NCBI RefSeq assembly: GCF_006345805.1
Contig: NC_042999.1
Location: forward strand, 63,736,001 to 63,800,000
Reading direction: 5' to 3'
Source of the DNA: Octopus sinensis
Lineage: Eukaryota
DNA: 64,000 nucleotides
The notes beneath the pieces were generated by a model. The model did no database searches. It was not told the origin of the DNA and saw only the letters and a program-made list of their open reading frames with translations. Both the position numbers and the translations under genes were made by a program. Position 1 is the first letter of the stretch; each line of letters begins with the position of its first letter. Of the stretch, positions 4,064 to 27,439 are shown piece by piece.

Positions 4064-4101
<38 letters not shown>

Positions 4102-4160: not shown

Positions 4161-4205
<45 letters not shown>

Positions 4206-4302
4206 ATATATATATAATATATATATATATATATGTATATATGTATATATATATATGTATATATATGTATATATATATATATATATTATTATATATATAT
4301 AT

Positions 4303-4359
<57 letters not shown>

Positions 4360-6056: not shown

Positions 6057-9000
6057 CTCGAAAGTGACGTTATGGGCACCAGATGGAATGGTTTTGGCTG
6101 AAATGGGGACAGTAGTAATATTTAACAAGAGTAGTGTAAGACGTTGACAGTTCCTTCTATCTCAAACTTTGACAGGATCATTTCCCCAGGAAGAAATTTT
6201 GTCTGCTTTCAAATTTGAATCTGCAGTGTCTCTTTAGACCTGTAGAAACAGTGGTTTAATCATTAGGCTCACCATCATCATCCGTTTTCCGTGCTGGCAT
6301 GGCTTGGACGGTTTGACTGAGGTCTGGAGAGCCAGTGGCTGCACCAGGCTCCAGTCTGATCTGGCAATGTTTCTACAGCTGGATGCCCTTCCTAACGCCA
6401 ACCACTCTGAGAGTGTAGTGGGTGGTTTTTATGTGCCACCGGCACAGGAGCCAGTCAGGTGGGCCTAGCATCGACCACGTTTGGATAGTGCTTTCTACGG
6501 GAGCCAGTCGGGGGGAACTGGCCACAAAACAGTAATCTAATGTTGGTGATACGATAAAATACATCCAGAACACTGAGTAATTTTTTTTTTATATAAAAAA
6601 ATACTTTCTTTTACTAAGCAACATGTTTTAGAAGAAGTGAAGAAAATAACTAAAAGTATAAATGATCAAATTATCAAGAAAACATTCACAATTACCTCAA
6701 TAAGGAAAAAGAGGAAGAAATTGGCTGGTAGTAGAACTAACAGTGTAGGGTTGATAAAACATCTTAGCTGCATCGAGGATATGACAACCTCTGTTGTGCT
6801 GGTGCTATGGAAACAATGCACCCAGTACACTCTGTAAAGTGATTGGCATTAGGAAGGGCATCAAAACAGACACCTTGCCAGAGATAGAACATACTGTAAG
6901 CCAGACATAGTCATCTATCCTATTTTGGAGGGCAGTAGCTCAGATAATGACCACCTGTCTAATCCATGTCAGCATGGCAAATGGATGCAAAATGATCGTG
7001 ATAATGATGCACAACTATGAATTCGTAAAATTAAAGATGCTTTTTTTTTTGTTTCTCAGCACAGATGTACACACCCCACCCCACAGGTGCTACAAAGGTT
7101 CCCTGTTTCTGCTCTGTATGGTCACTCAAATAGCAGCTAAATCTCCCTCAAAACACACCCCTACCACTTTATTTTAAAAGCAGAATAAACCATTAAATAA
7201 TGTGGTATGCAATGCTTGAAAAATAGATGGTAAAGTGTTGGTTGGATTGCTTTTAATCACGAGTATTTTGCTCTATCAGGGCTGGCTTAGAGTTAAATAA
7301 TTGTCTTTTATTTATCAGTTGGTAGTCTCACAGGTTAACTTTCTGTGGTATAACTCTGAGACAGCTGTATTTCGTCTGCCGTTACATTCTGAGTTCAAAT
7401 TCTGCCGAGGTCGACTTTGCCTTTCATCCTTTCGGGGTCGATAAATTAAGTACCAGTTACGCACTGGGGTCGATATAATCGACTTAATCTGTTTGTCTGT
7501 CTTTGTTTGTCCTCTCTGTGTTTAGCCCCTTGTGGGCAATGAAGAAATAGGTATTGAACCTGAAATCATGCGGTTGGGAAGCAAATTTCTTGACTGCACC
7601 CCTGCATTTTAAGCCTCACAATGAAAAAAAATTTTAAGATGAAAGATCATCTGAAAGTGTGACGGGTTCAGTTTATTTCCACAGTATATATTTCAACATC
7701 CATAGTCCTTGTTATTACATGACACCCCCATACCCCGTGCATCCATACTCATATGCAACACTTCTGAGCACTAGTACAACACGCTAATTTACTCTACTTC
7801 TCACACTGCAGTCATGGCTATGTAGTTATGTTAACTTAGTAACCATTTGGATCTAGTTATGATCCCATTGCTTGGCACCTTAACCATGTATTGTAACTGT
7901 AGCCACAAGCTAACTAATACCTTGTGGGTGGAGATGTATGTGTGTGTGTGTGTGTGTATGTGTTTGACACAACACTGTTGATTGGTAAACAAGTATTGAT
8001 GTGTTACAATGTCTAATTTGACAATTCAATAAAGACTGAAGTAAATAGTTTAGAAATGAGCTACGAAAAACTCTTGAAAGTAATGGGACTCATGGACATA
8101 GCCCCAAAATTGGAACCTTCAAAAGGACATATGACAGGCTTCCACACAGTTTCTATCTACTGAATTTAATTTGTAAATCTTTAATTAGATCAGAACTATG
8201 GTGAAAACACTTGTCTGAGGTGCCAAGAGGTGGGACCTAACCTAAAACCTTATGATTTTGAAATAAACAACCATGTAGGATTCTTTTAAAATATAAAACT
8301 GGATTGTTTTATTTATTTCACAAGAGATAAAGGGTCATTTGATTGACTCACTCACTAGTACACTATAATACTGACCCACAGACACACTTTCTCTTCTGTC
8401 TACTATACAAATAGCCTCTGCTTCTCTGTTTCTACAAAGATATACATGACCTAATGCATGTCTTCCACCTTCTCCTCCAGTCACTCCAATTGCATCACTG
8501 TCCAGATTCCTGTATACTAGATACTTACCTAATTCTTTCATACCAATGTTGCAACACTATGGAATTTCCTTCTCTTCTACAGAGTTTTCCTTCAGGCATC
8601 AATCTTCAGATGCTCAAACTTAACATCAGCCCCTTCAGTTTCGCTTGTCTGGAATGAACACTGATTAATTGACCTTCCCCTCCACTTGCTAAACTCATCT
8701 TGGACTTATATATACCTCTGGAACAGTTTTCCTACTGAACAATCAATCTGATTGACAAGAAAAGCTTAAAACTGGCCTGACTTCACCCAATTATTCTGAT
8801 CTTTTAGTCTAGTGAAGTCTAAAGCGGTTTTAAGCTCAAATATTTTCAGGTTTTGAAACAGAAGGTCAGCTTTTGTGAAAACATTTTGCTGGGTGAAGAA
8901 TGCTGGGTTATCCATCAAAGATTTCTACAACCTTTTATTCTGCGACTAGTGGAAGAGAGAGAGAGTACATCCTCAAACTAGAGATGTAACCTGAGGTGTT

Positions 9001-10811
9001 TGCAGCACAGTGTAACCACTAAATGCACTCCATGTGCTAGGCAGTGGCATTAAACTAGGTAGCATAATCACAAGATTACTGAAAATTGATAGAGATATTC
9101 AATGTTGGTTGTGTGTTATTCCTGAGTTGTAGAATTGTAGTGTTATTAGATGTTATGTCTTCGTTGTAGTGTGTTGTGGACGTCAACATTCATTAAAGAA
9201 TGCACAGACTTGACGAACCCTGATCAAGTTAGGCGTTTCAGAATACAGGGAGATAACAACATTGATTGTAACCAGATTTATCTCCTCTTACATTAATTTG
9301 ATAACGAAGCAGCTGCTTAAAATTAAGAATTCTTGGCTTAACAAAGTCAATTAGATAATAATAAACATCACGTTGGTTTGGATGTAATCCCATAATTTTG
9401 AATCAGGAATTCATAATTTACAAACCGTGATACAGTAGGGAATCCTCCTCCTCCTCATCACCACCACCACCATCGTTTAACATTCGCCTTCCATGCTAGC
9501 ATGAGTGGGAGGGTTTCACAAGGCCTGCATCAGACTTCTGTGACTGTTTTGGCAGGATTTTTACAGCTGGATGCCCTTCTTAACACCAACCATTCAGCAA
9601 AATGGACTTAGTGCTTTTTACGTGCCACAAGCACAGGCGAGGTCAGTTTTGGCAAGGTTTTAACAGCTGGATGCCCTTCTGAGCACCAGTCACTTTACAG
9701 TGTGGACTGGGTGCTTTTAAGTGGCACCTGCACTGACAGGGTCACCAAGTACTTGCAGGACAAAAAAAAATGCTTTCAAGAGGGGAGGAGGTGATCTTGC
9801 TTTGGATTATGAATAGTGAGACAGAAACATGTGTCTTGCTGTAGAGGAAGTACAAGGTTACCCAGCCAGAGAGAGAAAGATCAGGAATGAAGACAGAGGG
9901 AAGTGCAGGAGAAGGAGCGAGAGAGTGGGAGACAGCAGGATAGAGAAGGTGGCAAAATACCAGGCATATTCACAAGGAATGGGGATCAGAATATAAATGG
10001 GATGGTTGAGTAAAGGAAGGGAGAAATATAGACGATGGCAAGTGCCAGGGCATACCCTTGAGGTTCAAATGCCAATATATAAGTGGCAGGATATTACGAA
10101 GGGAGTGTAATTAAAGAGTGCAAGTAAGTGGCGAAAGACCTGGGTATGTATAGAGTTGGTGGGGCTACTGGATAGCCTTGATATAGAGGGACAGGGGTGT
10201 GAGGACAGGATTGGGGAGTGAGAGCTAGGCATAGTGTATGAAGGAGTTACATGTGGGTAGAACACACAGGTTGGAGGCTAACAGATGGCAAATATAGAGT
10301 AAGACAGAGCATGTGGGTAGAACACACAGGTTGGGGGAAAGCAGAGAGCAATGATACAATGGTACAGGGCCAAGAGGACAGGATTTAGTAGCCTGAGGTA
10401 ACCAAAGTATATTGAAGCGGAAATGTGAGAAAGAGATGTAGAGACGTAGTTTGGTTTGTTGTAGTAAAGTGTGGGTGGGACACAGTGCTCCTAGAACTCA
10501 GTTTTGCTGATGTGGCCAAGGACTTCATATTTCCTGACATCTCAGTCCATTGTCATTTCCCCCGTAAGGCCCATCTTCCTGAAATTGGTCCTTACCTTTT
10601 CATCTCACATCTTCCTGGGCTTCCCTCTTCCACTTTCAGTGATCAGTACTTCTTTATGCAGCTGTTCTCATTCATATGCATCACATGTCCAAACCAGTGT
10701 AGTCTTCTCTCTTGCATGCTACATTTGATTCCTCTTGTGCCCTACTTTTCTCTCAATACATTTGCACTTTGCTGTACATGTGCACCGATGTTGCACATCC
10801 AACAGAGCATA

Positions 10812-12750
10812 CTATGCCACCCTGCGGGATTGAGCCAAAGTGGCATAGTACCAAGGGTCTGTTATCTAAACACTTCATAACCAAAAATTTACTGAACATA
10901 GGAATAAAAATTCATAGGGTAGGAAGTAAGGCCAATAAGAAGTTCAATGCAATGGTAAAAAGAAGACATCCAAGTTTATTAAGTTCAGATTGCTTTTAGT
11001 TAATCCTGAAGCTCTCAAAAATTGTCGGCTGACGCATCTTCTTTTGGCGGATTTCATTCATTTCATTGTCTAGCCTATCACACGCCTGCATGACGCTGGG
11101 TTTTCCACTGCTCTGCTGCTGCATAAACTTTTGGATAGTGCTCCATGCTCTCTGGGCATCTGCAAATGAAACGTATTCCTCTTCCACAATTACCTCGTCA
11201 TCTTCACTTTCCACCGGCTCTTCGTTATGCATTACCTCCTTTGCTATTTCTTCTAGAGTGAAAGATCCTCCAGTTACGAGGCGATCGTCAGCACTGAGAA
11301 AATCAAACAGCTCAATTGTTTCGTTCTCATGTGTCTTTTCCTCGGGAGGTAAAGCTTTCCAGATCTCGAGCAGCTCAGCATCCTCTGGCTCTATTTGTAT
11401 TTCCTCTTCAATAAACTTGGCTTTCGCGAAACAGTTCTTAATCGTCAATTCACTGACCTGCTCCCATGCACGCCGAGCAACGTGCAGAGAGTTGAGCAAT
11501 GTAAATTTAAACTCGTTTCCTTTGTCCATGGCTTCGAGACAGCGGGACAGCAAGAGCTTTTTGTAATGGTGCTTAAGATTTTGTATGATTCCTTGATCCA
11601 TTGGTTGGGAATTTGCTGTCGTGTTGGGCGGAAAGAAGAGCATTTGGATGTTGTCCAAGTGGACGTCAGAAGGGTGACCAGAGAAGTTATCGAGACAGAG
11701 CAACACTTTGCAGTTTTGCTGCCCGAGTTGTCTGTCCTACGTTTGTAATATTTCTTCAAAAATTTCTGCTGTCATCCACGCCTTCGAATTAGCCTTGTAC
11801 TTCACAGGAATCTCATTGTTCTTAAACGCACGAGGTTGCTTGGAATTTCCGATCACCAGAAGAGGTAGCTTCTTGCTGCCGCTTAAGTTTGCTCCGACCA
11901 AAAGAGTGATTCTTTGCTTGCTTTTCTTTCCCCCTGTGCACTGCACTCCCTTGAAAGCCATGGTCTTGTTCGGAAGTAGTTGCCAAAAGAGTCCAGTTTC
12001 GTCCAAGTTGAACACATCGTTCGCAGAAAACTGCCTGAGCAAGGGCCACAGAACCTCTTGTTGCCACTTAATAAGAGATTGAGAATTCACCGCTCCAGTT
12101 TCGCCCTGCACTGTCTTGAACGTGATGCCGTGACGATTTTTGAAATTGTCTCGCCAACCATTGCTTGCTATAAAGTTCGGAATGTGCATAAGCTCGGCCA
12201 GTTTAATTGCTTTCTTCTTCAAAAGTTCACCACTGACCGGCAGATTCTGTCCTCTTGCTTGTTTCAGCCACATTAGCATGCCATCATCGAGCTTCGGGTT
12301 GTGAGATTGCGTCAGCTTCATGCGCTTCGATGGAATTCCAACGTTGATGGCTGCCTCGATTGCATCCTTTTTGTTGAGAATGCCCCTCACTGTGGTTCTC
12401 TTGACTTCGATGCCCCATTTCTTGCTCATTTCTCTAGCCAGCTTAGACTGGTTCGGCTCGTTTTTCACAGCATTGATAATCTCCTTCTTTTCCCTCAGCG
12501 TAAACTCAGTCCGATTGCGTTTCTGAGCTGACATTGTGTGCTACTTTCTGAACTTTTCCACAAGATTACAAATACGAAATGTACAAAATGTAGGAGTACA
12601 AAATTTCGAAAAGTTGCGTGCGCTTCAGTTTACAAGTGGCATAGTAGCAAGAGTTGAGGGTGGCATAGTAAAAATTTTTTGTTTATTATTTGGCCGGGAC
12701 CATGCAAAACTGGCATAGTAGCGAGGTGGCATAGTAGCGAGAGTTGACTG
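10812..12750 (-). mobile_element. Tigger/pogo DNA transposon (Tc1/mariner superfamily) at a TA site
   Basis: Right end TA-CAGTCAACTCTCGCTACTATGCCAC (minus strand) with repeated subterminal TACTATGCCAC motifs at both ends; TA at 10810-10811 and 12751-12752; flanks rejoin into a continuous RTE frame. Confidence 0.92.
10996..12534 (-). pseudogene. Tigger-type transposase, 512 codons with one in-frame TAG at 11737-11739
   Basis: ORFs 11737..12534 and 10996..11706 share a frame. CENP-B-like HTH domains (FTLREKKEII, ASNGWRDNFKNRHGI) and DDD triad NLDETG / LDNFSGH / QPMDQG (DD30D). Confidence 0.92.
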
Positions 12751-14624
12751 TATTACCTTCATTTCTCTCCAGTCTACACATGTCTTCTGCATTCCGAGCC
12801 CATGTCTCACTACCATGGAGTACAGACGTTTGTACACAAGCATCATATAGTCCACTGTTCACGCTGAGAGTTCTTTTGTTGCCAACAGAGGTAATAGCTC
12901 TCTGAACTTCCTCCACCCAATTCTTATTCTAGAAACAATATTTAGAATTTCTTCCAACTCCTTTCCTACATAGTGAGCAGGGCCTTTTACCTGATGGAAA
13001 GAGAAAGTTTTATCTTCTTTCTCACTAACAACCACTTTTGTCTTAGGTAGGTTAACTTTAAGGCCCTTTGTTTCCTTTCCTGGAATTTCTTCTCCATTTC
13101 TGCTAAAGATTTTGCAATAAGAGCTAGGTCATCAGTATCTGGCTGTTCCCACAGGCATCCAGTCTTGAATTCCTCTGTTATGTCCTGGAGGACTATAATG
13201 AATATGAGTAGGGTGAGAACTGAGCCCTAGTGAAACGCTGAATTCATCACTGTATTTATGGTCGACTCTCACCTTATTGACAGCACCACTGTACATGGCT
13301 TGGACAGCTCTAACGAACTACTCCTCTACTCCTAAATTCCTTAGAGACCACCATATAACAGAGCAGGGAACTGTTGAATGCTTTCTCCAGGTTAATGAAG
13401 GCTAAGTACAATGGCTTACTTTTGGCCAAGTAGTTTCCCTGCAGCTCTCTCAATAGGAAGATGCCATCTGTGGTACTCTTCCCCAGTACAAAACCAAACT
13501 ACATTTCATCTAGTTAATTCTATTTCTAATCAATTGAGCTATAATCCTCTCAGTAATTTTCATGTCTTGGTCCAGCAGTCTAATACCTCTAGTTGTTTCT
13601 GTCTAAGGCATCACCTTTGCCCTTGTAGCAGCCAACTATAATGCTACTACACCAGATGTTGGGGATGGTGCCTTCCTGAATAACCTGATTAACTATACAG
13701 GTGACTAAGCTGTCTCCTACACCACCAGAAATTTTAATCATCTCAGCAGTGATTCCTGATGGTCCAGGGGTTTTTTCTGTCTTTGTGTCTTTAATTGCCT
13801 TATCTATTATGCTGCTATCAACTTTTTCATGTTTAGTAACCTTTCATAGTGACACTTCCATGGATATTTCTTCTCTGAGCCACTAAGTGCAAGCATACCA
13901 TTATCCATTCACACACATTTCTCACCTATCACATCTCTATTTTCTCTGATACACTACTTTGCAATACTGTTCGCCTTACACCTCTGATCCTCACATTGTA
14001 AGACATTTGCAAATCTCTTACCTAGCCGCCCTTTTGGCTACCTGATATAATTCTCTGCTTCCACTGTTTTTCCAGTCTTTCCAGGCCTGTCTTTTTGCTT
14101 TTATAACACTGTCAACCTCCTTGCTCCACCACCATGTCACCCTTGGTCTAGCCAGGACTCTGCACCTGCCACAGATTTCATCCGTAGCCCTCAGTAGATT
14201 GTCCTGCAGGAACTTCCAGTTATCCCCAACTCTTCCTCTCTTTCATCAAAAGCTCCCATTAGTAAATCTCTAAATTTTTGTCTTATAATATAATTCAAAT
14301 TTCTTGGCTCATTATATTAACATCCACTTTCCTGATCATATTTATGAAATACATGGTTTATATTTTTTAATTATTTAGAAAAAAAAAAATTATGCAGAAC
14401 TTAGTTAAATAATGTTTTTCCATTATTATTCAGGAACATAGTTAAAAAAAAAAAGATTCTTTCATAAATTATAATGGACAGTTTAATTTAATGATCAACA
14501 CTAAAATTTGAGGTGTAATATGATAAAATTTGAGGTGTAGTATGATAGTAGGACCAATTGAAAGCTGTATGATGTTGAAAGATATTTTTGTCTTATGTTA
14601 TTTGGTCTATATTTCTCTTTTCAG

Positions 14625-14683
14625 AAATTTATTGAGAAGAATTCACTGTTGAAATCTTTGAAAGACAAAATCATATCATCTGA
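14625..14683 (+). CDS. ICE1: Coding exon 2, KFIEKNSLLKSLKDKIISS(D)
   Basis: Acceptor tttctcttttcag, donor GA|GTAAGT; 59 nt, phase 0 to 2. Confidence 0.88.
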
Positions 14684-15941
14684 GTAAGTAAATACTAGTT
14701 TCTTTTTCTTGGACACCAGGTTTTAAGGTTTTATAGTAGATGGGAAATGGGATATAGTACATGCACTTCTAAAAAATTTATGTCAATGCTTTCCAACTTA
14801 TGTAATGCAAAATTATATAGGTATGATGCAACATTATCTTTCGTTTGAACAGAACAGCTGACTGGCTTCCGTGCCAGTGGTACGTAAAAAGCACCATTTG
14901 AGCATGATTGTTACCAGCGTTGCCTTACTGGCACTTGTGCTGGTGGCACGTGAAAAAACATTCGAGCGAGGTTGTTGTCAATACCACTGGACTGGCTCCT
15001 GTGCAGGTGGCACGTAAAAAAACACCATTTGAGTGTGGCTGTTACCAGTACCGCCTGATTGGCTCTCGTGCTGGTGGCATGTAAAAGCACCCACTGCACT
15101 CTTGGAGTGGTTGGCATTAGGAAGGCATCCAGCTGTAGAAACTCTGCCAGATCAGATTGGAGTCTGGTGCAGCCATCTGGTTCGCCAGACATCAGTCAAA
15201 TCGTCCAACCCATGCTTGCATGGAAAGCGGATGTTAAACGATGAGGAGGAGGTGGATGATGATTGTCAACAGTGAGAAATTTTCTCCATGAGAAAACACA
15301 GCGAATCCCTTTCTTACAGATTTGAATATGTCTCAAGCATATTTGAACTGTTAGCAAGTTTGTATTTATTTACATCACTGCCTAATGCTGTCAGCCCGTA
15401 CTAAGTGTCTGCATATATTTTGACTTGCTGCAGGATTAGGCATATGAAGGCTTTTTTTTTACAGTGTGGGATGAATATGAAAATGACTTATTCTTTACTT
15501 GTTTCAGTCATTTGACTGTGGCCATGTTGGAGCACTGCCTTTCGTTGAGCAAATAGACCCCAGGACTTATTCTTTGTAAGCCTAGTACTTATTCTATCGG
15601 TCTCTTTTTGCCGAACTGCTAAGTTATGGGGATGTAAACACACCAGCATCGGTTGTCAAGCGATGTTGAGGGGAAAAACACACACACATACATACATACA
15701 TATATATATATATGCATGGCCACAGTTAAATGACTGAAACAAGTAAAAGAGTAAACAATAGCTTACATGGGTAAAAATCCACCTTACTAATTTGCTCCAA
15801 GAAGTAATATGTAAATATTCAAATTTACCAAATCCTTTCTGTTATATGATAGCTTTAATCTAAAAAAAAAAAAAATCATTTTTGAATTTTTTGTTTTATA
15901 TATTTTTTATCCTATTGTAATTTTTTTTTCTCTTTTTGCAG

Positions 15942-15976
15942 TAAAATCATGAAGCTACTTCAGACCAAGACAAATG
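15942..15976 (+). CDS. ICE1: Coding exon 3, (D)KIMKLLQTKTN(E)
   Basis: Acceptor tttttctctttttgcag; ends at U12 donor G|ATATCCTTT; 35 nt, phase 2 to 1. Confidence 0.88.
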
Positions 15977-17465
15977 ATATCCTTTATCTACTTTTTGAGA
16001 TAATATCTCATTGTTTGCTTTTTAATTTGCTGTATGAATTATTCATGTCTGTGCATACATGAACATATATAAAGTAGGTGCATTTAGATTTACAAATTGG
16101 AGGAAAAAGTACTCAACATGCTAAGCAGAGTGAATGTGTGTGTGTCTCTTTTACTCTTTTACTTGTTTCAGTCATTGACTGCGGCCATGCTGGGGCACCG
16201 CCTTTAGTCAAGCAAATCAACCCCAGGACTTATTCTTTGTAAGCCTAGTACTTATTCTATCGGTCTCTTTTGCTGAACCGCTAAGTTACAGAGGACATTG
16301 GTTATCAAGTGATGTTGGGAGGACAAAAACAGACACACAAACACGCACACACATATATATACATATATACGACGGACTTCTCTCAGTTTCCGTCTACCAA
16401 ATCCACTTACAAGGCTTTGGTCAGCCCGAGGCCATAGTAGAAGACAGTTGCCCAAGGTGCCACGCAGTGGGACTGAGCCCGGAACCATGTGGTTGGTAAG
16501 CAAGCTACTTACCACACAGCCACTCCTGCGCATCCCTAACTTGTTTCAGTCATTAGATTGTGACTATGCTGGAGCACCACCTTGAGGAATTTCAATTAAA
16601 TGAATCAACCCCATTACTTATTTTTTTTTAAGTGTCTGGTATTTATTGTATTGGTCTATTTTGCCAAACTGCTAAATTATGGGGATGTAAACAAACCAAT
16701 ATTGCTTGTCAAGTTGTGGTGGGTGACAAACACAGACACACACATACATGATGGGCTTTGGTCAGCCCAAGGCTATACTACAAGACACTTGCTCAATGTA
16801 CCATGCAGTGGGTCTGAATCTGGAATCCTGCTGTTGGGAAGCAAACTTCATACCAAGCAGCTGAAAAGGTTACCCACCCCATAATTGCTATGGTGCTTGA
16901 GCTTTGTGAAGTGTTGTGCATGAAACCTGAGTGCCAGATTGACTTTGAAAGATTTTTGCTTTTGTATTATTTTTCAGTTTCAGGTGTATCTATCTACCTG
17001 TCTGCTTTCCACCAGAAACACACACACACAGAGCAATGTTTAGAAAATGTAGGATTGTGTAAATTTAATAAATGGAATAAGAATTCTAACATATTATATT
17101 TTGTGATGTAAATATTTTTCGAAGAGCTGTAACTGATGTGATATGATACATTTTTAGAAATATAATTATATGGTTTAGTTGTTTTTGGTGTTACACAAAC
17201 TGTTGTGTTCTATTCACTAGCGTAGCTAGAGTGTGTGCCACCCAGGGCAGCTCCTCTATTTTCCACTCCCAGATCCCACAAAAATCACATGTTGCCTACA
17301 ACAGAATGAAAAGTGCTGCCCAAGGTGGACCACCCTTATAGCCCCCACCCCAGCTATGCCAGTGATTCTATTCATACCATGTTATTGTGTTCGTCCTGAG
17401 ATAATACTTGGTTTGATTTTAAAAATGTCTTTACCAAAATTAAGATAATCCTTAACAGCTATCAC
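15977..17465 (+). other. U12-type (minor spliceosome) AT-AC intron, 1489 nt
   Basis: 5' splice site ATATCCTTT at 15977, branch site TCCTTAAC at 17449-17456, terminal AC at 17464-17465; removal keeps the frame (AAT G|AG TCA). Confidence 0.93.
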
Positions 17466-17526
17466 AGTCAGCATTTCTTAAGAAAAAGTTGCAGAATTTA
17501 GCCGAGTGTTTAAAGCAAAAAGAAAG
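17466..17526 (+). CDS. ICE1: Coding exon 4, (E)SAFLKKKLQNLAECLKQKE(R)
   Basis: Preceded by TCCTTAAC branch site and AC acceptor; donor AG|GTTTGT; 61 nt, phase 1 to 2. Confidence 0.88.
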
Positions 17527-20285
17527 GTTTGTATGATATAATATATTTAACTGTGTTATTTGTGCTGTTTCTGTATTTATATTTGTCTGCTAAATCTCAT
17601 TTGCATGAAAGACTTGATATACTGGAGCATGGCAAGCTATATAAGTAGCCAAGTGAGTAGGGTATGGAATAGTTTCAAGTTTATATGCCATCCTTGGTGC
17701 TGTGCTCTGTTGTACCATTGATGAAATATGAACCCTTGGTTCTCTACTTACCTGGCAGTAGTAGAGCAATTGGAAATACAGGGAATGATGTGGTGGTGGT
17801 GGTGAAGTGTCAGAGCAACTGGAGATTGATAAAACATTTGGTGGATGGTCTTCAGTGATTGGTCATTACTGGTTTATTTGTTGGTCTACAGTTGTAGACC
17901 AACCTCTTTTGCACCGTAGACCAGTTTCATGCGAGATAATTTCCCCCCAGTACAGTGTATCATAAAAAAAAATAAATAAATAAATGCGCCCTTTTAAAGC
18001 CTAGCTAGGCTCATGGGCCCGGATTCTCAGTTCCCATGGCGTATGTGTTCCCAAGCTGGACGGGACGCCAGTCCATCGCAGTGTTACTCATTTTTGCCAG
18101 CTGAATGGACTGGAGCAACGTGAAATGAAGTGTTTTGCTCAAGAACACAATGCGTCGCCCAGTCCGGGAATCAAAACCACAATTTTACGATTATGATGCT
18201 GACACCCTATCCACTAAGCCACGCGCCTCCACACAGTGTATCATACACATGAAAAAACACAATAAAGTGCATGATATATTACACAATACATATATAATGC
18301 AAAAACACCTTGCAGTGTATGCTAGTTAATAAAATAGAAATAAACTTTAAAAATTTATTCTTTTTGTGTGACCCACTGGTTGAGGATCCCTAGTCTATGG
18401 GATTGGAGATTTATCACCAATCTGATAATTGGTTAACAGTACTAGAAATCAGACTATGGTTGGTTGTTATTAGTTTGATGGTCACAACTAGTTAATGGTT
18501 GGTCTACAAAACTGAGATCGGCTACAGTTTAATGATATGTATAGCAGTAAGATTATTAATTTAATTGTTTGTATACTGTATTGAGATTGGTCGCTATTTT
18601 AATGGTCGGCCTACTGTTGTGACATTGCTCACTAGTTCATGTGGTTCATCTATAGTGGTAAGATGAAGTCTGTCATGAACCCAAGGACTCATAAGGCCTG
18701 AAAATAACCAGGTTCCCATGACATAAGTGACTGAGATTGCAACACTCCCCACTGAAAAGAATGCTGGTCCATTGCAGGGTTAAGTTACCAGTTATTATTA
18801 CTAAGTTATTATTACTAAGTTATTATTACCAGTTATTATTACTAAGTTACCAGTTATTATTAAGTTCCCAGTTATTACTGGTTATTACAGCTGAGTGTAC
18901 TGGGGCAATAGGAAATGAAGTGTTTTGCTCCAAAACACAATACACTATCCAGACTTGGAATCGAACCCTCAATCTTATGATTGTGAGTGTCATACTCTAA
19001 TCACTAGGCCACATGCCTCCACACAGTAGTGAGCTTGATAACATTTTAATGGTTGTGCACCACATTTGGTTTCTGCAGTAAGCTACCTAAACAATTGTGA
19101 GCACTGTACATATCTAGTCTGTTACAAGTGAGATTTGAACCATGAACACATTGTTTGTAAAGTGCATGACATTACCTATTGCTCTACTGATCCAAAATAA
19201 GGTTGGGTTATTTGCTTTGAAACTGCAAACATTTTATTTTAACTTGTTTTGGAAGGGATTTTACAGCTGGATGCCCTTCCAGATGCCAACCACATTACAG
19301 TGTAGACTGGGTGTTTTTAATGTGGCACCAGCACTGGCAGGGTAACCAAATAATTCACAAGACAAGGAATTATGAGAGGGGCAGGGCATTTGTGGAGGGG
19401 AACTTGTGACAGAGGATGAAAAGTTAGAGTGTGAAAAAGAGATAGAGAGACAGAAGCAGGTGTCTTGCCACAACAGAGGGGTCATTTGAGGAGGTGATCC
19501 AGTATCAAATGATGAAAGATTAGAGTGTAACAGGGAAATAGAGAGGTAGAAATAGGTGTCTTGTTATAGAGGAGGTACATGGTTACCCAGAGAGAGAGAG
19601 AGAGAGAGAGGGGTACAGAAAGGGGCCATAAACAAGTGTGCTGATATAAAGGAGATAATTAGTTACCTAGTCAGGGGAAAACAAGAGAGAGAGAGAGAGA
19701 TTGACCAAAGGGAAATAGAAAGAGAGTAGGAAACAGCAGAAGAGAGATGGTGTGGTGTTACTAATAAGTAACAGGAATATGAGCATAGAACCTGGTTAGG
19801 AAAATGGGGAGTAGGTGTGGGGAGCAGTGATACAGTGAGTATGGCAGTGTGGGCAAGAAAGGGGATTGGAAAACAATCATAATTTATGAAGAGGAAATGT
19901 GAGGAAGAGAAAGATGCAATTAGAAAAGGAATGGTAGTTTGATTTCTTAGGGTAGAGTGGGTGAAAAGTGTGTTGTTACATGTGGGTGGGACACAACTTT
20001 TCTAGCACTCAGTTTTATGGACGGGTCTTCCCTAGGACCTCATATTGCCAAACGTCCCGGTCTACTGTCATTTCCTCAGTGAGCCCCAACATATAATCTG
20101 GTAATATATTTATGCTTACTATTCCATGCTAGCATAGACAGACAAGATTTTTTGAGGCAGTGTTTTGTAGCTGGATACCCTTCCTCATGTCAGTCTTCTT
20201 ACTTACCTCTTATGCCACAATATCTTGTCTGTTCTTCAATACTTTTATTTTCTTTCTCTGAAGCTGATTGATTTCTCTTTGTCAG

Positions 20286-20349
20286 GACTTCTCAAGAACT
20301 GCGTTCACAAGTCAACAATCTTCTCAAGGGAGCTGAACTCAATAAGAAG
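20286..20349 (+). CDS. ICE1: Coding exon 5, (R)TSQELRSQVNNLLKGAELNKK
   Basis: Acceptor tttctctttgtcag, donor AAG|GTAAAG; 64 nt, phase 2 to 0. Confidence 0.88.
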
Positions 20350-20530
20350 GTAAAGCAGACAATTCTGTATCTTTTATTCTTTTAATGGTTTCAGCCATTT
20401 GACTGTGGCCATGGTCGGGGGTACTGTTTTCTTATGCATCTTAAAGTGGATGTTTTGTTGGAACACCAAATAGTGTGTTACTTACCCTGAGAGGATCTCT
20501 ATGGATACATGTTGCATAAAAGCACACATT

Positions 20531-21042
20531 CCATAAATCCTCGACTATAATCCGCACTTTTTCCCCCAAATTTAAAGGTCAAAATCCCTAGTGTGTACTA
20601 TATACGAGGTTAAAAATGAAAATTATTTTCTAAGCAATGTCTAAGTCTCTATTTGCTGTCCGGCAATGTTTATTCAGATGCATTTTGTGATGTCGGGTGC
20701 AAAAATACCTTAAGCTAAGCCTGAAATCAATGAAGTCATAAAAGAATCATCCATAACTTGCAGTAAGCAACATTTATTAAACATTATTACTGTTATTTCT
20801 TTATTTTCTGCAAACAAAATTCACAAAAAAGCTACACGTTTGCATTATGCTATATATATAATAATAATAAAGGACGTTACCGTATACATTTTTACAAACC
20901 AAGGACGTTATATAGACCTCATTGACTCAAGTTAGAGAAGGGGTGTGTATTATACACATGGTTTAGGTTTTTCAGAGGTACAGCCCCCTAAAAATCCCCT
21001 GCGTATTATACTCAAGGGCAGACTGTACTCGAGGGTTTATGG
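20531..21042. mobile_element. Non-autonomous Tc1/mariner-superfamily element (Tc2/pogo-like ends)
   Basis: Ends CCATAAATCCTCGACTATA and TACTCGAGGGTTTATGG-TA are imperfect inverted repeats; TA on the right flank. Confidence 0.6.
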
Positions 21043-21050
21043 TATTTATA

Positions 21051-21333
21051 TCATTGGCAGATGAGAATTCTCTGCTATGGTTGCCAGTTGGATGTAAAAA
21101 TTGCCCTTTGGTATTGATACTGCTTCTGTTCTTAATAATTATTTTTGGATGAGCCTGCTGGCTATTTGCAACATCAGTGTCAGAAATGGCACTAAAATTC
21201 TATATATTGTTGGCAGTGAGATTTGTCTGGTATGTGGCTACAAGATGTCTGCCGTTGAAGGAACCGAGTAGGTCAAAATTACGTGATTTGGCAATTTTGG
21301 AGCCTGTTGCAGACGATTCTCATCTGCCAATGA
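21051..21333. mobile_element. MITE with 19-bp TIRs
   Basis: TCATTGGCAGATGAGAATT and GATTCTCATCTGCCAATGA, 18/19 complementary. Confidence 0.65.
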
Positions 21334-21484
21334 CATAAATATGTGTGCTTTTATGCATTATGTGTCGGTATGAGAGGTTCTGTCGAAGTAAATACCACAG
21401 CGTTTGCTGTTGTAACAAAGCACTCTCACTGGATATAAAGATTGCCTTTTGATATTAATACCATTTCTGTTGCTAATAATTATA

Positions 21485-21742
21485 TATATATATATAAAAA
21501 TTAGAAAAAAAAACACCTTTTATCAATTCAAAATGAACAATTAAATTACACCATCTAGAAAACTATATATAATAGAAATATTAAAATTAAAATAACAGTA
21601 AATTGCAATTTACTTAATCATCGGTATATTATTGTTATTTTGATTTTAATATTTCTATTATATGTAATTTTCTAGATGGTGTAATTTAATTGTTCATTTT
21701 GAATTGATAAAAGGTGTTTTTTTTCTAATTTTTATATATATA
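21485..21742. repeat. Long foldback palindrome with about 110-bp arms
   Basis: 21485-21597 is nearly the reverse complement of 21633-21742. Confidence 0.9.
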
Positions 21743-23392
21743 TTATATTTTGTGGAATTTGATTTAGTATTTCTAAATTGAATTTTTCCCTGTAAGTTAA
21801 GAATAATATTCCCTCAAATAATAATAATAATTATTATTATTATATACATATATATGCACACAACACACATACAACCATTATCTTCCATGCTGACATGGGC
21901 TGGACTAATAATAGATACTGGCTGGGCACATGAAAAATTCACAGAAAATATAAAAAATGTAAGCATTTGTAAATTGTGTGCTGGTGCCATGAGAAATGTT
22001 TCTATATTGTGACAGTTACAGAATATAGAAAGAATTGTAAAACCGATAACTATATAATCCAACCAAAATATCTCAGTTACGCAAACGTAAACAGAATTGC
22101 TATTTCACCTAAAATACATTGTACGTATTCAAAGAACCTTCTTGGTTTAGTGGTACGGAATGTTTTTCTGATATTCTTTTATTCTTTTACTTGTTTAAGT
22201 TATTTGACGGTGGCCATGCTGGAGCACTGCTGTTTAGTTGAAGAAATTGACCTCCGGACTTATTCCCTGTAAGCCTGGGGCTTATTCTATCAATCTCTTC
22301 TGCTGAACAGCGACTATAAAGTCAAAGTCAGTCAGTCAGTGATAGTAGATTCATTGTACAAGTTTTTCAGTTGGTGTCAGTGTCAGTTATGTGATACATA
22401 CGAGTTTGAGTTACCGTCAAGGTATACGTTTCAAAGTCATTGCCTTGCGGAGCTATCACCGATAGCATGATAGATGAGCCAATATTAGCAAAAACAAACC
22501 CCAGGACTTGTTTTTTTTATGTTTGATACTTATTGTTTTGGTCATTTTTGTCAAAATGCTTAGTTGCAGGGGACACCAATTGTCAGGCATTGGTGCAGGG
22601 GCAAGCACAAATGCAAAGACACACACACACATAATAGGCTTTCAAACAGTCTCTGTCTACCAAATTCGCTCACAAGGCTTTGGTCAGCCCTGGTAGAAGA
22701 TACTTACCTAAGAGGCTGTGCCATGGGATTGAACTCAGAACCACATGGTTGCAGGACAAGCTTCTTAACCACACAGTTTATCTGCACCTTGCCATGTCTT
22801 AAGAAGGGTAAAACGAGAAACAAAAACTAGGAGCTTCTCTATGGTTGCCTGATTTGCTAAAAGTAACAGATAAATCTCACTTAATTTGTATCCTACTGTT
22901 ATTTAAAAGGGAAGATACGTTAGATAATGTCTTTCTAAATATGTTCTTGTCTGAATTAAAGACAGGAGGGATATGATGGGAATGCTTTTGACCAGAGGTC
23001 TATTCAATTAGGGCTAAGCAACTAGAACTGAAGAAATTACTGTATTTTCTGGCTTATAAATCAAATTTTGGTCTACAAAATTTGTAGAGAAAAAAGGTAC
23101 GTCAACTTATACACAAAGATGTTTTGGAAGGACCAAAAAGTTTATGTGAGAGCAGCAAGATTTTGAAAGATATGATGATGTTTGAATGTTTACATCGCAT
23201 ACTACATTGACCTGTATCTTGAAAAATACAGTAGTGTTGGCCTGTGATGACCTATGATGTTGTGTTTGTATTAAAAAGGTTATTGTTTCTGATTGTCTAA
23301 TTCTTACTTGCTTTCCTACTATTTAGGTAATATTTGTTTAATTTTAACATTTAACTTCTATTCACCTTTATAAAATGCAATCCATTTTTCAG

Positions 23393-23473
23393 CTTAAAGC
23401 AGACCATGAGTTGGCTTTGACTAAGAAAGATTCAATTATTGAGGACTTGAAGCTTAAAATCTCTTACATTGAG
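23393..23473 (+). CDS. ICE1: Coding exon 6, LKADHELALTKKDSIIEDLKLKISYIE
   Basis: Acceptor ccatttttcag, donor GAG|GTAAGT; 81 nt, phase 0 to 0; coiled-coil-like. Confidence 0.9.
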
Positions 23474-23782
23474 GTAAGTTTCTAATTGACTGAAAAAACA
23501 GTGAATTTATTGATGTTTTTTGTTATTCTTTTATGTTTATTTGTCTGAAACAACATTAGTTTGCTGTTGTTTAGTTGTAATGAGATATTAAGTCCAGCTG
23601 TAGCCTCTGTGTCATATTTTTAGGCAACATACATGACTTTATCTTGAGTTTATTTTGTTGGAAACAAATGTCATTGTTCCTGTTGGGAAACTGGAAAGAA
23701 AAAACCCATCATGCAAGCAGTGTCTCTTGTTTCCACTCTTCTGTGATAATATCTGGTCATGGAGAAATGTTACTTCGCTTGG

Positions 23783-24013
23783 AAACGGCGAGCTGGCAGA
23801 AACGTTAGCACGCCGGGCGAAATGCGTAGCCGTTTTTCGTCTGCCATTATGTTCTGAGTTCAAATTCCGCTGAGGTCGACTTTGCCTTTCATTCTTTTGG
23901 GGTTGATAAATTAAGTACCAATTATGCACCGAGGTTGATGTAATCGACTTAAACGTTTGTCTGTCCTTGTTTGTCCCCTCTGTGTTTAGCCCCTTGTGGG
24001 TAGTAAAGAAATA
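23783..24013 (+). mobile_element. tRNA-derived SINE family B; other copies near 7366-7550, 24411-24640, 44470-44704, 49073-49300 (+) and 58029-58423 (-)
   Basis: Recurrent about 230-nt unit GGCGAGCTGGCAGAAACGTTAGC...GAGTTCAAATTCC (B-box-like)...TTTAGCCCCTTGTGGG...AAAGAAATA. Confidence 0.8.
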
Positions 24014-26315
24014 GGTGGGGTTAGTAAGAAGAAGGACACTGGGCCATAGAAAAGTTGCCTCAACAAATTGTATTTGACCCATGCAAGCATGGAAGGCTGG
24101 ATGTTAAAACAATGATGGTATCTTTAAAAAGGAAGGGTACATGAAATAATTAATGTAGTATTAAATGCCCTGAGTTTGAATAAAAGACTGGATGGTTATG
24201 AATGGAATGGTTATTCAATCAGTGTTGCCCTAAAGTTAAACAATGTTCGGAACCCAAGGAAATTAGTGACGGTCTGTATTGGCAAAAAAGTATTTGTTAA
24301 TAAAAGATGTAAGGCGGTGAGCTGGCAGAAACGTTAGCATTCTGGGCAAAATGCTTATTGGTCTCTTGTTTCCACTCTTGGTCATGGAGAAAAGTTACTT
24401 TGCTTCGAAATGGTGAGCTGGCAGAAACATTAGCACGCTGGGTGAAATGCGGAGCCGTATTTCATCTGTCTCTACGTTCTGAGTTCAAATTCCGCCGAGG
24501 TCGACTTTGCCTTTCATCCTTTCGGGGTCGATAAATTAAGTACCAGATATGAACTGAGGTCGATGTAATCGACTTAATCCCTTTGTCTGTCCTTGTTTGT
24601 CCCCTCTATGTTTAGCCCCTTGTGGGCAATAAAAAAACAAAAAAGATGTATTGGTTGAAATGTTACAGTTAACCGCTCTCATTGTTGTTCGTATCTCTGC
24701 TTACTTCATTGTTTAGTAGTTAACTGTAGGAATGGTAGTGTAATAGCAGGCAACAAACTGACTGTCTTTTTAGACCATTGGAGAAAATGCCTTGCACTAT
24801 CTGTTCTGACTCTCTGCTCAGTGAGTTCAAATCCCACTGAGGGTAACTTTGTCTTCCATCCTTTTGCAGTCAGTAAAAATTGACAGTAATGGGATATCAA
24901 CTCTGAACTTATAAGAGGTTAACCCATTACCTCAAAGTATTTAAATCATTGCTCTACCAATTCTGTTGACCGTAAAAAAGTACAACTGAGTATTCTTATC
25001 ATTATCATCGTCATCATTTTATGTTCACTTTTCCATGGCTGCATGGGTCAGATGGAATTTACTGAGGTAGATTTTCTATGGCCAGATGCCCTTCTTGTTG
25101 CCAAGCTTGTTTTCAGTCAAGGTAATAATCATTTAGTCTATCATCAATGGACTATGATTCTTTTATTTGCAACATGTCAAGAAGTTCTAAAGTGCTTTCA
25201 CAGTTGACTGCAAACATACAACACTGATCATATTGATAGCTAGGCTGTTGTTTTGTTTAAAGTCAGTGAACGTGTATTGACAGAATTGCCAATTTTACCT
25301 GTTTTTTTCATTCGGTATAGACTTATCTTGGGCCGTAGACTTAATCTATTGCCTAATTGAACACCACCATAAGGTGCTTGAGTGTCTTTAACAGTGTTTA
25401 TTCCGATGCAAACATTTGGGTCAGTTCTCTTGTTTAAGGATAACTTTCCATCTTCTCAAGAGTCTCAGAGACTTTAATAAAAATAAAGGGTCATAATTGT
25501 AGCCCTTTCCTCCCTATGTGGTAAAAAATGAAAGTAAGATAGTAAAGCAGTAAAAGAATGTTATTTTGTTTCAGTCATTGGACTGTGGCCATGCTTTGGC
25601 ACCACCTTGAAGGGACCAGTCAAACAAATTGATCTTAGCACTTGGTGTTAAGTCTGGTACATATTTTAACTTTTACTGAGCTGCTAAGTTACAAGGACAT
25701 AAACAAACCAAGATTGTCAAGTGGTGGTGGGAGACAAACCAAACACAAGGATACATATATATATATACCAAATTCACTTACAGGGCATTGGTTGTTCTGG
25801 GACTGTAGTAGAAGACACTTGCCCATGGTGCTGGTGGTGGGACTGAACCTGAAACCATATGGTTGCAAAGTGAGTTTCTTAACCATACAGCCATGCCAGG
25901 AACAATTTTAATGGCTTAGTCCCAAAAGAAATTTCAGTATTCATGACCCTTTTCAAGGGCTCCAAGACTGGTGTGAGAAAGAGAGAGGTCATCTTCAGTT
26001 TTGAAATCTGGCTTGAATGCTTGCAACAAAATGTACTTTTGTAAAGGTGACCATGTCCCAGATAATGGTGTTAAACCAAGCAACAGATCAAATCCACCCC
26101 TGATAATAGAAACAGCTTTCCAGTAGGCTTCCACACTGTTTCCATTTACCAAATTTCACTCACAAGGTATTGGTTAATCTGAGGTGATGTTTATAGAAAC
26201 TTGCACATCACTCCACACCAGTATTGAAACTGAAAAGTGAACATTTGCAAAGTAAATTTCTTAACCCCAACGTTATGCTTAATTTATAACCTGACTTTTT
26301 ATTTTTCTACTTCAG

Positions 26316-26425
26316 AGTGAAAATAAGATCTTCCGTGAATCATCTGAAGCCTATCTTGCTGAAAAGAGCAAACTAAAGGAGTTGGTCTCAGTGAAGGAGC
26401 TTGCTGAGAAAAAACATTCATTAAG
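26316..26425 (+). CDS. ICE1: Coding exon 7, SENKIFRESSEAYLAEKSKLKELVSVKELAEKKHSL(S)
   Basis: Acceptor tttttctacttcag, donor AG|GTTAGT; 110 nt, phase 0 to 2. Confidence 0.9.
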
Positions 26426-27191
26426 GTTAGTTGAAGTTTTTATTGTGCATTTATTCATATTTCTGTGAATTGTATCAGGTGAAGTCGTTTATTGTTCTTC
26501 GCTTCTGATGACATAACTTTGGTCATACTCTCTCTCTCTCACACACACACACCTCTACCACCACCAAGTACATACATCTTAATCACTCTTATTGTTCAAA
26601 CTACATTAACCACATATCAACCACTAAGCCAACAAGGGAGCCTCTACACAGTTACTCAGCCTTCAAGAAACAGCAATCAAATCTCCCTCATATCACATCA
26701 TCTTAGAAAAAAAAGGAAGACCATTGGATAATGTGTTCTGTGATACACTAAACCTGAAAAAAAAAAGGAAAAACAACTGGGTGGCTATGGTTGGAATTTA
26801 TATTTTGATCATAGGTTAACTCATCATCATCATCACCATTGTCTTTTTAATGTCCATTTTCCCATGCTTACTGGATGAGAAGGAATGTTTTGAGTTAGAT
26901 TTTTCTATGGCCAGATTCCCTTTCTGTTGCTAGCCATTACATATTTCGAAGCAACATTTGAGGAAGATTTGGTTGCAGTTTCTAGTGTATCATGTTACCC
27001 TGTATATGCTTCCTTGGTGGCTCAAAACTGTTTTATAATGGACATCTGGTGTAAAACTGTAAAGAATTGGGATTCAGAATGACAGGATATTCAATAAAAT
27101 GAATGTTTTGATATTACGGATTAAAAATATATTGTTGTTCTGTATGTTCTATTGCTGATCATAATAAAAATAATTGCGATTTCTGTTGCAG

Positions 27192-27229
27192 CATTGAGAA
27201 GAAAGACAAGCGGATTAAAGTGTTAACAC
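27192..27229 (+). CDS. ICE1: Coding exon 8, (S)IEKKDKRIKVLT(Q)
   Basis: Acceptor tttctgttgcag, donor AC|GTGAGT; 38 nt, phase 2 to 1. Confidence 0.88.
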
Positions 27230-27439
27230 GTGAGTTTATAATTTTTTAATATTCCTTTTTGTTTTCCTTTTCTTTTTCATTATATGCTAGTGCTATCAGT
27301 TTTGAATTTTAACCCTTACAGAACTGGAATTGTCAATAAGTAATTTTTCTAAAGTACACTGAGAGACAGTAGTTCTGATTGTCATGCCATTTTCTATCCT
27401 TATATAATGCTAGGTAGCCATGTATCTTCTGTGCTACTT

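What the first reader, a model, noticed from the sequence alone, without database searches (positions are those of the whole stretch)
15977..17465. U12-type AT-AC intron in a putative snRNA-transcription factor: possible spliceosome feedback loop
Seen: exact minor-spliceosome signals (ATATCCTTT donor, TCCTTAAC branch site 9 nt before the end, terminal AC). This junction keeps the frame; the neighbouring AG at 17466-17467 gives a stop within four codons. Established: AT-AC introns are rare, need U11/U12/U4atac/U6atac snRNPs and are often slowly spliced; the little elongation complex promotes Pol II snRNA transcription. Inference: if this is ICE1, its production depends on minor snRNAs whose synthesis it may support, creating a feedback circuit. 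Whether the intron is already catalogued in vertebrate ICE1 is unknown to me.
Basis: partly seen in the sequence, partly recalled or inferred. Interest (0 to 1): 0.8.

Follow-up and report, generated by a model that had tools for sequence, protein, structure and literature searches.

The report
Conserved minor-spliceosome intron in octopus ICE1
The window holds the octopus version of ICE1, a scaffold protein for snRNA transcription, and its third intron is a true AT-AC minor-spliceosome intron at the same codon as the one already catalogued in human and mouse ICE1, so it is real and ancient but not new.

Summary
Intron 15977-17465 (+) starts with ATATCCTTT. It carries TCCTTAAC at 17449-17456, with the branch A 10 nt from the end, and it ends in AC. 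Joining 15976 to 17466 gives an open frame of 1624 codons that matches an annotated Octopus sinensis protein across the junction.

The gene is an ICE1 orthologue from an octopus, not a vertebrate. A profile built only from vertebrate ICE1 C-termini hits the octopus C-terminus at E 3e-16, profile-profile probability is 100%, and the N-terminal motif aligns.

The intron is already catalogued. Olthof et al. 2019 list Ice1/ICE1 as a minor-intron gene in mouse and human with the same 12-base donor, ATG|ATATCCTTT. I read orthologous genomic DNA directly. An AT-AC intron sits in the same codon and phase in Argonauta, a bivalve, a nemertean, a starfish, amphioxus and a gerbil. A scorpion lacks it.

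This is therefore an ancestral bilaterian U12-type intron. The proposed feedback loop (ICE1 needs minor snRNAs, and LEC transcribes them) is logically possible. ZC3H8, another LEC subunit, also has an AT-AC intron in mammals. The loop remains untested, and loss of the intron in the scorpion argues against it being essential. Novelty and interest are low.

The parts
1397..64000 (+). Octopus ICE1 orthologue, partial. The start codon is at 1397 and 15 exons lie in the window (aa 1 to about 1631 of about 1972). The conserved C-terminal domain lies mostly beyond the window end.
   Evidence: tblastn of P0001 on the window; exon boundaries; family assignment.
15942..15976 (+). Exon 3 (35 nt). It encodes (D)KIMKLLQTKTN plus the first base of codon E51.
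   Evidence: preceded by a GT-AG intron with a strong polypyrimidine tract.
15977..17465 (+). Intron 3: U12-type AT-AC intron, 1489 nt, phase 1.
15977..15985 (+). 5' splice site ATATCCTTT, an exact U12-type AT-AC consensus. With its 3 exonic bases it is identical to the mouse and human ICE1 donor, ATG|ATATCCTTT.
16146..16861 (+). Two adjacent copies of an interspersed SINE-like repeat fill about half of the intron interior. They are not part of the splicing signals.
   Evidence: blastn of the intron against the window: copies at 37568-37969, 39503-39889, 48050-48231, 15494-15755, 22175-22776 and 25566-25893.
17449..17456 (+). Branch-point sequence TCCTTAAC, with the presumed branch A at 17455, 10 nt from the 3' end.
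17464..17465 (+). Terminal AC of the intron. There is no polypyrimidine tract upstream (pyrimidine fraction 0.50).
17466..17526 (+). Exon 4 (61 nt). It encodes the last two bases of E51 plus SAFLKKKLQNLAECLKQKE(R). The 61-nt size is shared with Argonauta, Solemya, Acanthaster and Branchiostoma.

Best explanation
Intron 3 (15977-17465) of the octopus ICE1 orthologue is an ancestral U12-type AT-AC intron removed by the minor spliceosome.

Inferred mechanism, from established knowledge of U12-type splicing: U11 snRNA, and later U6atac, pairs with ATATCCTTT. U12 snRNA pairs with TCCTTAAC and bulges the branch adenosine about 10 nt from the 3' end. The AT and AC termini are joined without need of a polypyrimidine tract. 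Exons 3 and 4 are joined in phase 1 to make codon E51, inside the conserved N-terminal coiled-coil motif of ICE1.

Failure to splice gives a premature stop, whether by retention or by use of the adjacent AG. Functional ICE1 mRNA therefore requires minor-spliceosome activity.

Shown here: the signals, the unique reading-frame solution, agreement with the annotated protein, orthology to ICE1, and conservation of the same AT-AC intron at the same codon in seven bilaterian lineages, together with the human and mouse catalogue entries.

Inferred: actual U12-dependent splicing in octopus. I found no evidence that the intron is more than a conserved, constitutively spliced relic. A regulatory role remains speculative.
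For: Sequence signals at the stated coordinates.

AT-AC is the only splice pair that reproduces the protein P0001, and the CDS is open for 1624 codons.

Orthology to ICE1:
- The C-terminal 382 aa of the Octopus sinensis orthologue P0001 (97% identical to the window's protein; only its first ~40 residues are encoded in the window) find 86 proteins among 1.84 billion. Every match lies at or near the C-terminal end of its protein; about three quarters are over 1,300 aa and the rest are short fragmentary models.
- These proteins are named little elongation complex subunit 1 in frogs, rodents and a fish, and carry UniRef's ICE1-domain name in a lizard.
- An HMM built from 26 vertebrate C-termini hits the octopus at E 2.9e-16 with Z = 1.8e9. 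hhalign of invertebrate against vertebrate alignments gives probability 100%, E 7e-42, over 343 columns.
- The N-terminal motif LKxKII.(T/S)D aligns, which places octopus TKTN|E opposite vertebrate QKCD|E.

Catalogue: Ice1/ICE1 has a minor intron in both mouse and human, with 5'ss ATG|ATATCCTTT and BPS TTTTCTTTAACA / TTTTCTTTAATA (PMC6717393 Table S2).

Direct reading of orthologous DNA. An AT-AC, phase-1 intron lies in the same codon in:
- Argonauta (ATATCCTTT...TCCTTAAC...AC, 1752 nt)
- Solemya (3481 nt)
- Lineus (407 nt)
- Acanthaster (306 nt)
- Branchiostoma (2443 nt)
- Meriones (2404 nt)

Molluscs are relatively rich in minor introns, and O. sinensis was used in a pan-eukaryotic minor-intron survey (PMC10639083).
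Against: No RNA-seq or cDNA was available here. Use of the junction in octopus rests on a RefSeq (Gnomon) protein model, frame logic and conservation.

The motifs alone are not statistically rare in a 64-kb AT-rich window.

Pfam ICE1_C scores 24.9 bits on the octopus protein, just under the gathering cut-off of 27. The Pfam model is vertebrate-centred: a frog protein scores 284 bits, an annelid 25.6, and an oyster and a scallop score nothing.
Confidence: 0.93

Rival explanations
1. The minor intron makes ICE1 output depend on minor-snRNP levels. ICE1/LEC in turn drives transcription of U11, U12 and U4atac, so the intron has been kept by selection as a homeostatic sensor.
For: ICE1 is the LEC scaffold, and LEC acts on Pol II snRNA genes, which include U11, U12 and U4atac (PMC5493778). 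U12 behaves as a LEC target in flies (PMC6199344).

The intron has kept its AT-AC type, codon and phase in seven bilaterian lineages. A second LEC-specific subunit, ZC3H8, also has an AT-AC minor intron in mouse and human, while ICE2, ELL and EAF1 do not. Retention creates a premature stop.
Against: Nothing tests it, and no paper in the searchable library states it. Positional conservation is the rule for U12-type introns, and neutral processes are argued to explain much of their evolution (PMC10639083). The scorpion orthologue has lost the intron cleanly. LEC also serves the major snRNA genes, so the loop would not be specific. U6atac is a Pol III transcript (general knowledge).
Confidence: 0.12
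2. The intron is a U2-type AT-AC intron spliced by the major spliceosome.
For: A small class of AT-AC introns is U2-dependent (general knowledge; also mentioned in PMC7367187).
Against: The donor is the exact U12 consensus ATATCCTTT, not the U2-type ATAAGT-like donor. A perfect TCCTTAAC lies 10 nt from the 3' end and there is no polypyrimidine tract. Orthologues in human and mouse are scored as minor introns.
Confidence: 0.02
3. The motifs are chance matches and the junction is an annotation artefact. The real mRNA uses other junctions or skips exons 3-4, which would stay in frame.
For: The motif arrangement arises in 16% of shuffled windows. Skipping exons 3 and 4 together keeps the frame. 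There are no transcript data here.
Against: The motifs sit exactly at the two exon ends that the protein requires, and no GT-AG alternative fits. The same intron with the same signals is present at the same codon in six other species. Exons 3 and 4 encode the most conserved N-terminal motif of the family.
Confidence: 0.02

Closest known systems
Minor (U12-type, AT-AC) intron of human ICE1 and mouse Ice1, as listed in the Minor Intron Database work of Olthof et al. 2019
   Same: Identical donor 12-mer, ATG|ATATCCTTT. Same gene family, same codon of the N-terminal motif (KCD|E in mammals, KTN|E in octopus), same phase 1, AT-AC termini, and a branch site about 10 nt from the 3' end. The position was read directly in gerbil DNA.
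   Different: The octopus branch site is a perfect TCCTTAAC, where mammals have TCTTTAAC/T. The downstream exon is 61 nt in octopus, as in other invertebrates and amphioxus, but 19 nt in the gerbil. Intron length is 1489 nt against 2404-2780 nt. The intron interior is unrelated and in octopus is filled with SINE-like repeats.
U12-type AT-AC introns in general (for example in ZC3H8, PHB2, E2F4, SCN8A)
   Same: 5'ss /ATATCCTT, BPS TCCTTRAY close to the 3' end, no polypyrimidine tract, a single such intron among GT-AG neighbours, not phase 0, and deep positional conservation.
   Different: Nothing of substance. This is a textbook example.
Little elongation complex subunit 1 (ICE1), the scaffold of LEC for Pol II snRNA transcription
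   Same: Overall architecture: N-terminal coiled coil with the conserved LKxKII.TD motif, a very long low-complexity middle encoded by one 3.7-kb exon, and a C-terminal ICE1_C-type domain. Profile matches to vertebrate ICE1 are significant.
   Different: RefSeq names the octopus protein 'probable serine/threonine-protein kinase DDB_G0282963'. That is a compositional misnomer, and no kinase domain was found. The Pfam ICE1_C score is just below the cut-off. The middle region carries octopus-specific tandem peptide repeats. Function was not tested.

Membership tests
U12-type (minor-spliceosome) intron, AT-AC subtype | 5' splice site matching /[AG]TATCCTT | tested here: met
   ATATCCTTT at 15977-15985, the only copy in the window.
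U12-type (minor-spliceosome) intron, AT-AC subtype | Branch-point sequence TCCTTRAY roughly 8-20 nt upstream of the 3' splice site | tested here: met
   TCCTTAAC at 17449-17456, with the branch A 10 nt from the intron end.
U12-type (minor-spliceosome) intron, AT-AC subtype | AT and AC terminal dinucleotides at junctions that keep the reading frame | tested here: met
   This is the only splice pair reproducing the protein (15/15 residues). The CDS is open for 1624 codons. The neighbouring AG gives a stop.
U12-type (minor-spliceosome) intron, AT-AC subtype | No polypyrimidine tract before the 3' splice site | tested here: inconclusive
   The pyrimidine fraction from -25 to -4 is 0.50. Twelve of the 13 GT-AG introns have 0.59-0.82, but intron 7 also has 0.50.
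U12-type (minor-spliceosome) intron, AT-AC subtype | The orthologous intron is U12-type in other species | tested here: met
   Human and mouse catalogue entries. Direct DNA reading in Argonauta, Solemya, Lineus, Acanthaster, Branchiostoma and Meriones.
U12-type (minor-spliceosome) intron, AT-AC subtype | The junction is observed in transcripts and splicing depends on U11/U12/U4atac/U6atac | not testable with these tools
   No RNA-seq or experimental data were available. There is only the RefSeq protein model P0001 spanning the junction.
ICE1 (little elongation complex subunit 1) | C-terminal ICE1_C domain at the extreme C-terminus | tested here: met
   Pfam PF25817 scores 24.9 bits, E 2e-5, below the cut-off of 27. 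A vertebrate-only HMM hits at E 2.9e-16 and hhalign gives 100% probability, E 7e-42. The phmmer hits are named ICE1. The domain itself lies mostly outside the window and was tested on the 97%-identical O. sinensis protein.
ICE1 (little elongation complex subunit 1) | N-terminal coiled coil with the conserved LKxKII.(T/S)D.L motif (the ELL-binding region in human) | tested here: met
   Alignment A1: L31, K32, K34 and D39 are invariant across octopus, bivalves, an annelid, a brittle star, frogs and a lizard. This region is encoded in window exons 2-4.
ICE1 (little elongation complex subunit 1) | Gene structure shared with bona fide ICE1 (AT-AC intron in the codon after KC[DEQ]) | tested here: met
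ICE1 (little elongation complex subunit 1) | Binds ELL/EAF, ICE2 and ZC3H8 and supports Pol II snRNA transcription | not testable with these tools
   Known only from the human and fly literature (PMC5493778).

The most novel reading that the evidence does not exclude
The AT-AC intron has been held in the same codon of ICE1 since the bilaterian ancestor, and a second LEC subunit (ZC3H8) also carries an AT-AC intron in mammals. Together they could form a homeostatic loop. Minor-snRNP shortage would lower ICE1/LEC output through intron retention and a premature stop, and LEC output would set transcription of U11, U12 and U4atac. No searchable paper states or tests this loop.
Probability: 0.12. 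Interest if true: 0.55.

Novelty: already known. Interest (0 to 1): 0.18.

Why it matters
As found, it matters little. ICE1 is already on the published lists of minor-intron genes, and the octopus junction is already built into a RefSeq gene model.

Two modest points are useful.

First, the intron is a clean, deeply conserved marker: same codon, phase and AT-AC type from octopus to mammals, lost in a scorpion. It identifies the octopus protein, misnamed a 'serine/threonine kinase', as ICE1.

Second, the intron explains annotation errors in other genomes. Models for Solemya, Lineus, Elysia and a frog read into it as '...D-I-L...'.

If the feedback idea were true, it would link minor-spliceosome activity to snRNA gene transcription. 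That would be relevant to minor-spliceosome diseases, but it would have to be tested in human or mouse cells, where the same intron exists.

Tried and rejected
- Two of the three word-indexed protein searches returned nothing. These were the C-terminal query and the N-terminal alignment A1. The first probably failed because the index does not reach the far C-terminus. The second probably failed because coiled-coil words saturated the candidate list. The exhaustive HMMER search replaced them.
- Genomic look-ups of the two octopus proteins P0001 and P0002 failed because they are not on record. The oyster gene was too long to return DNA.
- No solved structure matches the protein.
- An Rfam gathering scan of the whole window gave no hit, so there is no snRNA or other known RNA gene here.
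- I considered treating motif rarity as evidence and rejected it. Shuffles show the arrangement is not rare by itself.
- I considered the kinase name given by RefSeq and rejected it. No kinase domain is present. The only other Pfam hit on a homologue is a sub-threshold Tropomyosin match to the repeat-rich region in O. bimaculoides P0002 (the same match is seen on the window's own large exon).
- Before DNA was available I inferred conservation from protein read-through signatures such as KCED-ILF...FLNFVH-YDEQ. Direct DNA reading later confirmed this.

Full report
**What is in the sequence**

Reading 15700-17800 shows exon 3 (15942-15976) ending ...ACAAATG, followed at once by ATATCCTTT (15977-15985). 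Near the other end, TCCTTAAC lies at 17449-17456. After nine more bases comes the terminal AC (17464-17465), and exon 4 begins AGTCAGCATTTC... at 17466. Each motif occurs once in the whole window on either strand.

On their own these motifs are not rare in an AT-rich 64-kb window. Expected counts are 1.5 and 2.4. A donor, branch site and AC arrangement on one strand within 20 kb turned up in 16% of Markov shuffles. The case rests on context, not on motif statistics.

**Gene model**

The largest ORF in the window (52619-56269) is 97% identical to an Octopus sinensis RefSeq protein of 1972 aa, P0001. tblastn of P0001 places 15 exons on the + strand from 1397 to at least 63215.

A search over all GT-AG, GC-AG and AT-AC pairs around each gap finds a unique perfect solution for every intron. 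Thirteen introns are GT-AG. Intron 3 can only be AT-AC, at 15976|17466, which gives ...LLQTKTN-E-SAFLKK... exactly as in P0001.

The spliced CDS is open for 1624 codons. The same call gives these further results:
- The intron is phase 1.
- Its last 25 bases are only 50% pyrimidine, against 0.59-0.82 for all but one of the GT-AG introns.
- Retention gives a stop after 28 intron codons.
- The adjacent AG gives V-S-I-S-stop.
- Skipping exon 3 or exon 4 alone shifts the frame, whereas skipping both keeps it.

**Is it ICE1?**

RefSeq calls the protein a 'probable serine/threonine-protein kinase DDB_G0282963'. Pfam finds no kinase domain, only ICE1_C at 24.9 bits, just under the cut-off of 27. The Pfam model is vertebrate-centred: a frog protein scores 284 bits, an annelid 25.6, and an oyster and a scallop nothing.

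An exhaustive phmmer search with the C-terminal 382 aa against 1.84 billion representatives found 86 proteins. Every match lies at or near the C-terminal end of its protein; most of these proteins are 1,300-3,100 aa long and about a quarter are short fragmentary models. The vertebrate hits are named little elongation complex subunit 1. UniRef gives the same name to a bivalve protein.

An HMM that I built from 26 vertebrate C-termini alone hits the octopus C-terminus at E 2.9e-16, even with Z set to 1.8e9. hhalign of an invertebrate alignment against the vertebrate alignment gives probability 100%, E 7e-42, over 343 columns.

The N-termini also align (A1). The motif LKxKII.(T/S)D.L...KC(D/E/Q) is shared, and octopus TKTN|E lies opposite vertebrate QKCD|E. 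The gene is an ICE1 orthologue. The organism is an octopus, not a vertebrate.

**Already catalogued**

PMC8034651 names Ice1 among minor-intron genes. Table S2 of Olthof et al. 2019 (PMC6717393) lists Ice1/ICE1 as a minor-intron gene in both mouse and human. Its entries are:
- 5'ss ATGATATCCTTT in both species
- BPS TTTTCTTTAACA in mouse and TTTTCTTTAATA in human
- intron chr5:5437115-5439894 in human
- intron chr13:70621457-70623922 in mouse

The 12-base donor string is identical to the octopus one.

**Direct comparison of orthologous DNA**

Gene loci could be fetched for seven orthologues. An AT-AC intron interrupts the same codon in the same phase in six of them. In all six species and in the octopus, a TCCTTRAY-like box places the branch A 8-13 nt from the terminal AC.

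| Species | Group | Exon end and donor | Intron length (nt) |
|---|---|---|---|
| Argonauta hians | octopod | g\|ATATCCTTT | 1752 |
| Solemya velum | bivalve | g\|ATATCCTTT | 3481 |
| Lineus longissimus | nemertean | g\|ATATCCTTA | 407 |
| Acanthaster planci | starfish | g\|ATATCCTTT | 306 |
| Branchiostoma floridae | amphioxus | g\|ATATCCTCA | 2443 |
| Meriones unguiculatus | gerbil | g\|ATATCCTTC | 2404 |

The gerbil branch site matches the mouse entry. The seventh orthologue, from the scorpion Centruroides sculpturatus, has a continuous exon at this point, which indicates a clean intron loss.

The 61-nt size of the downstream exon is also shared by octopus, Argonauta, Solemya, Acanthaster and Branchiostoma. 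In the gerbil that exon is 19 nt. The intron therefore predates the protostome-deuterostome split.

Several published gene models mis-handle it and read into the intron as '...D-I-L...'. These are Solemya, Lineus, Elysia and one Leptodactylus model.

**How it most likely works**

By the established mechanism for U12-type introns, U11 and U6atac recognise ATATCCTTT and U12 recognises TCCTTAAC. Productive ICE1 mRNA therefore needs the minor spliceosome, because unspliced or mis-spliced RNA carries an early stop. This step is inferred; I had no transcript or perturbation data. The intron interior is not conserved, and about half of it consists of two copies of an interspersed SINE-like repeat found elsewhere in the window.

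**The feedback idea**

LEC, with ICE1 as scaffold, acts on Pol II snRNA genes, which include U11, U12 and U4atac (PMC5493778). U12 behaves as a LEC target in flies (PMC6199344). ZC3H8, another LEC-specific subunit, also has an AT-AC minor intron in mouse and human, whereas ICE2, ELL and EAF1 do not. The loop is therefore logically possible, and I found no paper stating it.

There are four points against it:
- It is untested.
- Positional conservation is normal for U12 introns, and neutral explanations are favoured in the largest survey (PMC10639083).
- LEC also serves the major snRNA genes.
- The scorpion has lost the intron.

I put the loop at about 0.12.

**Verdict**

The feature is an orthologue of an already catalogued minor intron, and interest is low.

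Noticed in passing
window 31363-31899 (-), inside ICE1 intron 8 (27230-45576): A single-exon ORF of 178 aa on the opposite strand, with an Ig domain (Pfam Ig_3, ig, I-set) and a hydrophobic, transmembrane-like stretch near its C-terminal end. A 59%-identical ORF (E 4e-72) lies in the same intron of Argonauta ICE1 (L006 12581-13084). A 156-aa Ig-domain gene is also nested antisense in the oyster ICE1 gene. This looks like a conserved nested gene.
   Followed up: partly
window 10996-12534 (-), inside intron 1: Two adjacent ORFs (265 and 236 aa) carry the CENP-B_N, HTH_Tnp_Tc5 and DDE_1 domains of a pogo/Tigger-type transposase. They appear to be one transposase gene split into two ORFs.
   Followed up: partly
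window about 1555-5200, inside intron 1: An extremely AT-rich block of simple repeats (GC 10-20%) gives long spurious 'YIYIYM' ORFs on the + strand.
   Followed up: no
window 52544-56265 (exon 12, 3.7 kb): The giant exon encodes low-complexity sequence with tandem peptide repeats. There are many 'NNPETKF'-type units, and a unit of about 37 aa (DIPLKSVN...KLKELQSE) is present three times here but twice in O. sinensis P0001. The NNPETKF array is much longer in O. bimaculoides P0002.
   Followed up: no
window 16146-16861, 15494-15755, 22175-22776, 25566-25893, 37568-37969, 39503-39889, 48050-48231, 60660-60745: Multiple copies of one SINE-like interspersed repeat of about 380-400 bp, at 64-93% identity. 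Two sit side by side inside the AT-AC intron.
   Followed up: partly
L004 609-650 (Centruroides sculpturatus ICE1 orthologue): The scorpion orthologue has no intron at the conserved AT-AC position. The exon reads straight through ...AAATGCGAAGAAAACGAA.... This is a clean loss in a lineage (arachnids) said to be fairly rich in minor introns.
   Followed up: partly
Proteins P0010 (Solemya), P0011 (Lineus), P0072 (Elysia), P0086 (Leptodactylus), P0039 (Pelobates), P0012 (Sinanodonta): Deposited gene models mis-handle the AT-AC intron. They read into it ('KCED-ILF...', 'KCQD-ILKK...', 'KCDD-ILLYNKC'), start inside it ('...KKIQ-LQF', where Q = C|AG), or skip the flanking exons. DNA confirms this for Solemya and Lineus.
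   Followed up: partly
L001 12581-12599 (Meriones) compared with window 17466-17526: The exon after the minor intron is 61 nt in octopus, Argonauta, Solemya, Acanthaster and amphioxus, but only a 19-nt micro-exon in the gerbil. This matches a 14-residue gap in vertebrate ICE1 in alignment A1.
   Followed up: partly
Literature: PMC6717393 Table S2: ZC3H8, another LEC-specific subunit, also has an AT-AC minor intron in mouse and human (ATA|ATATCCTTT). ICE2, ELL and EAF1 are not in the list.
   Followed up: partly
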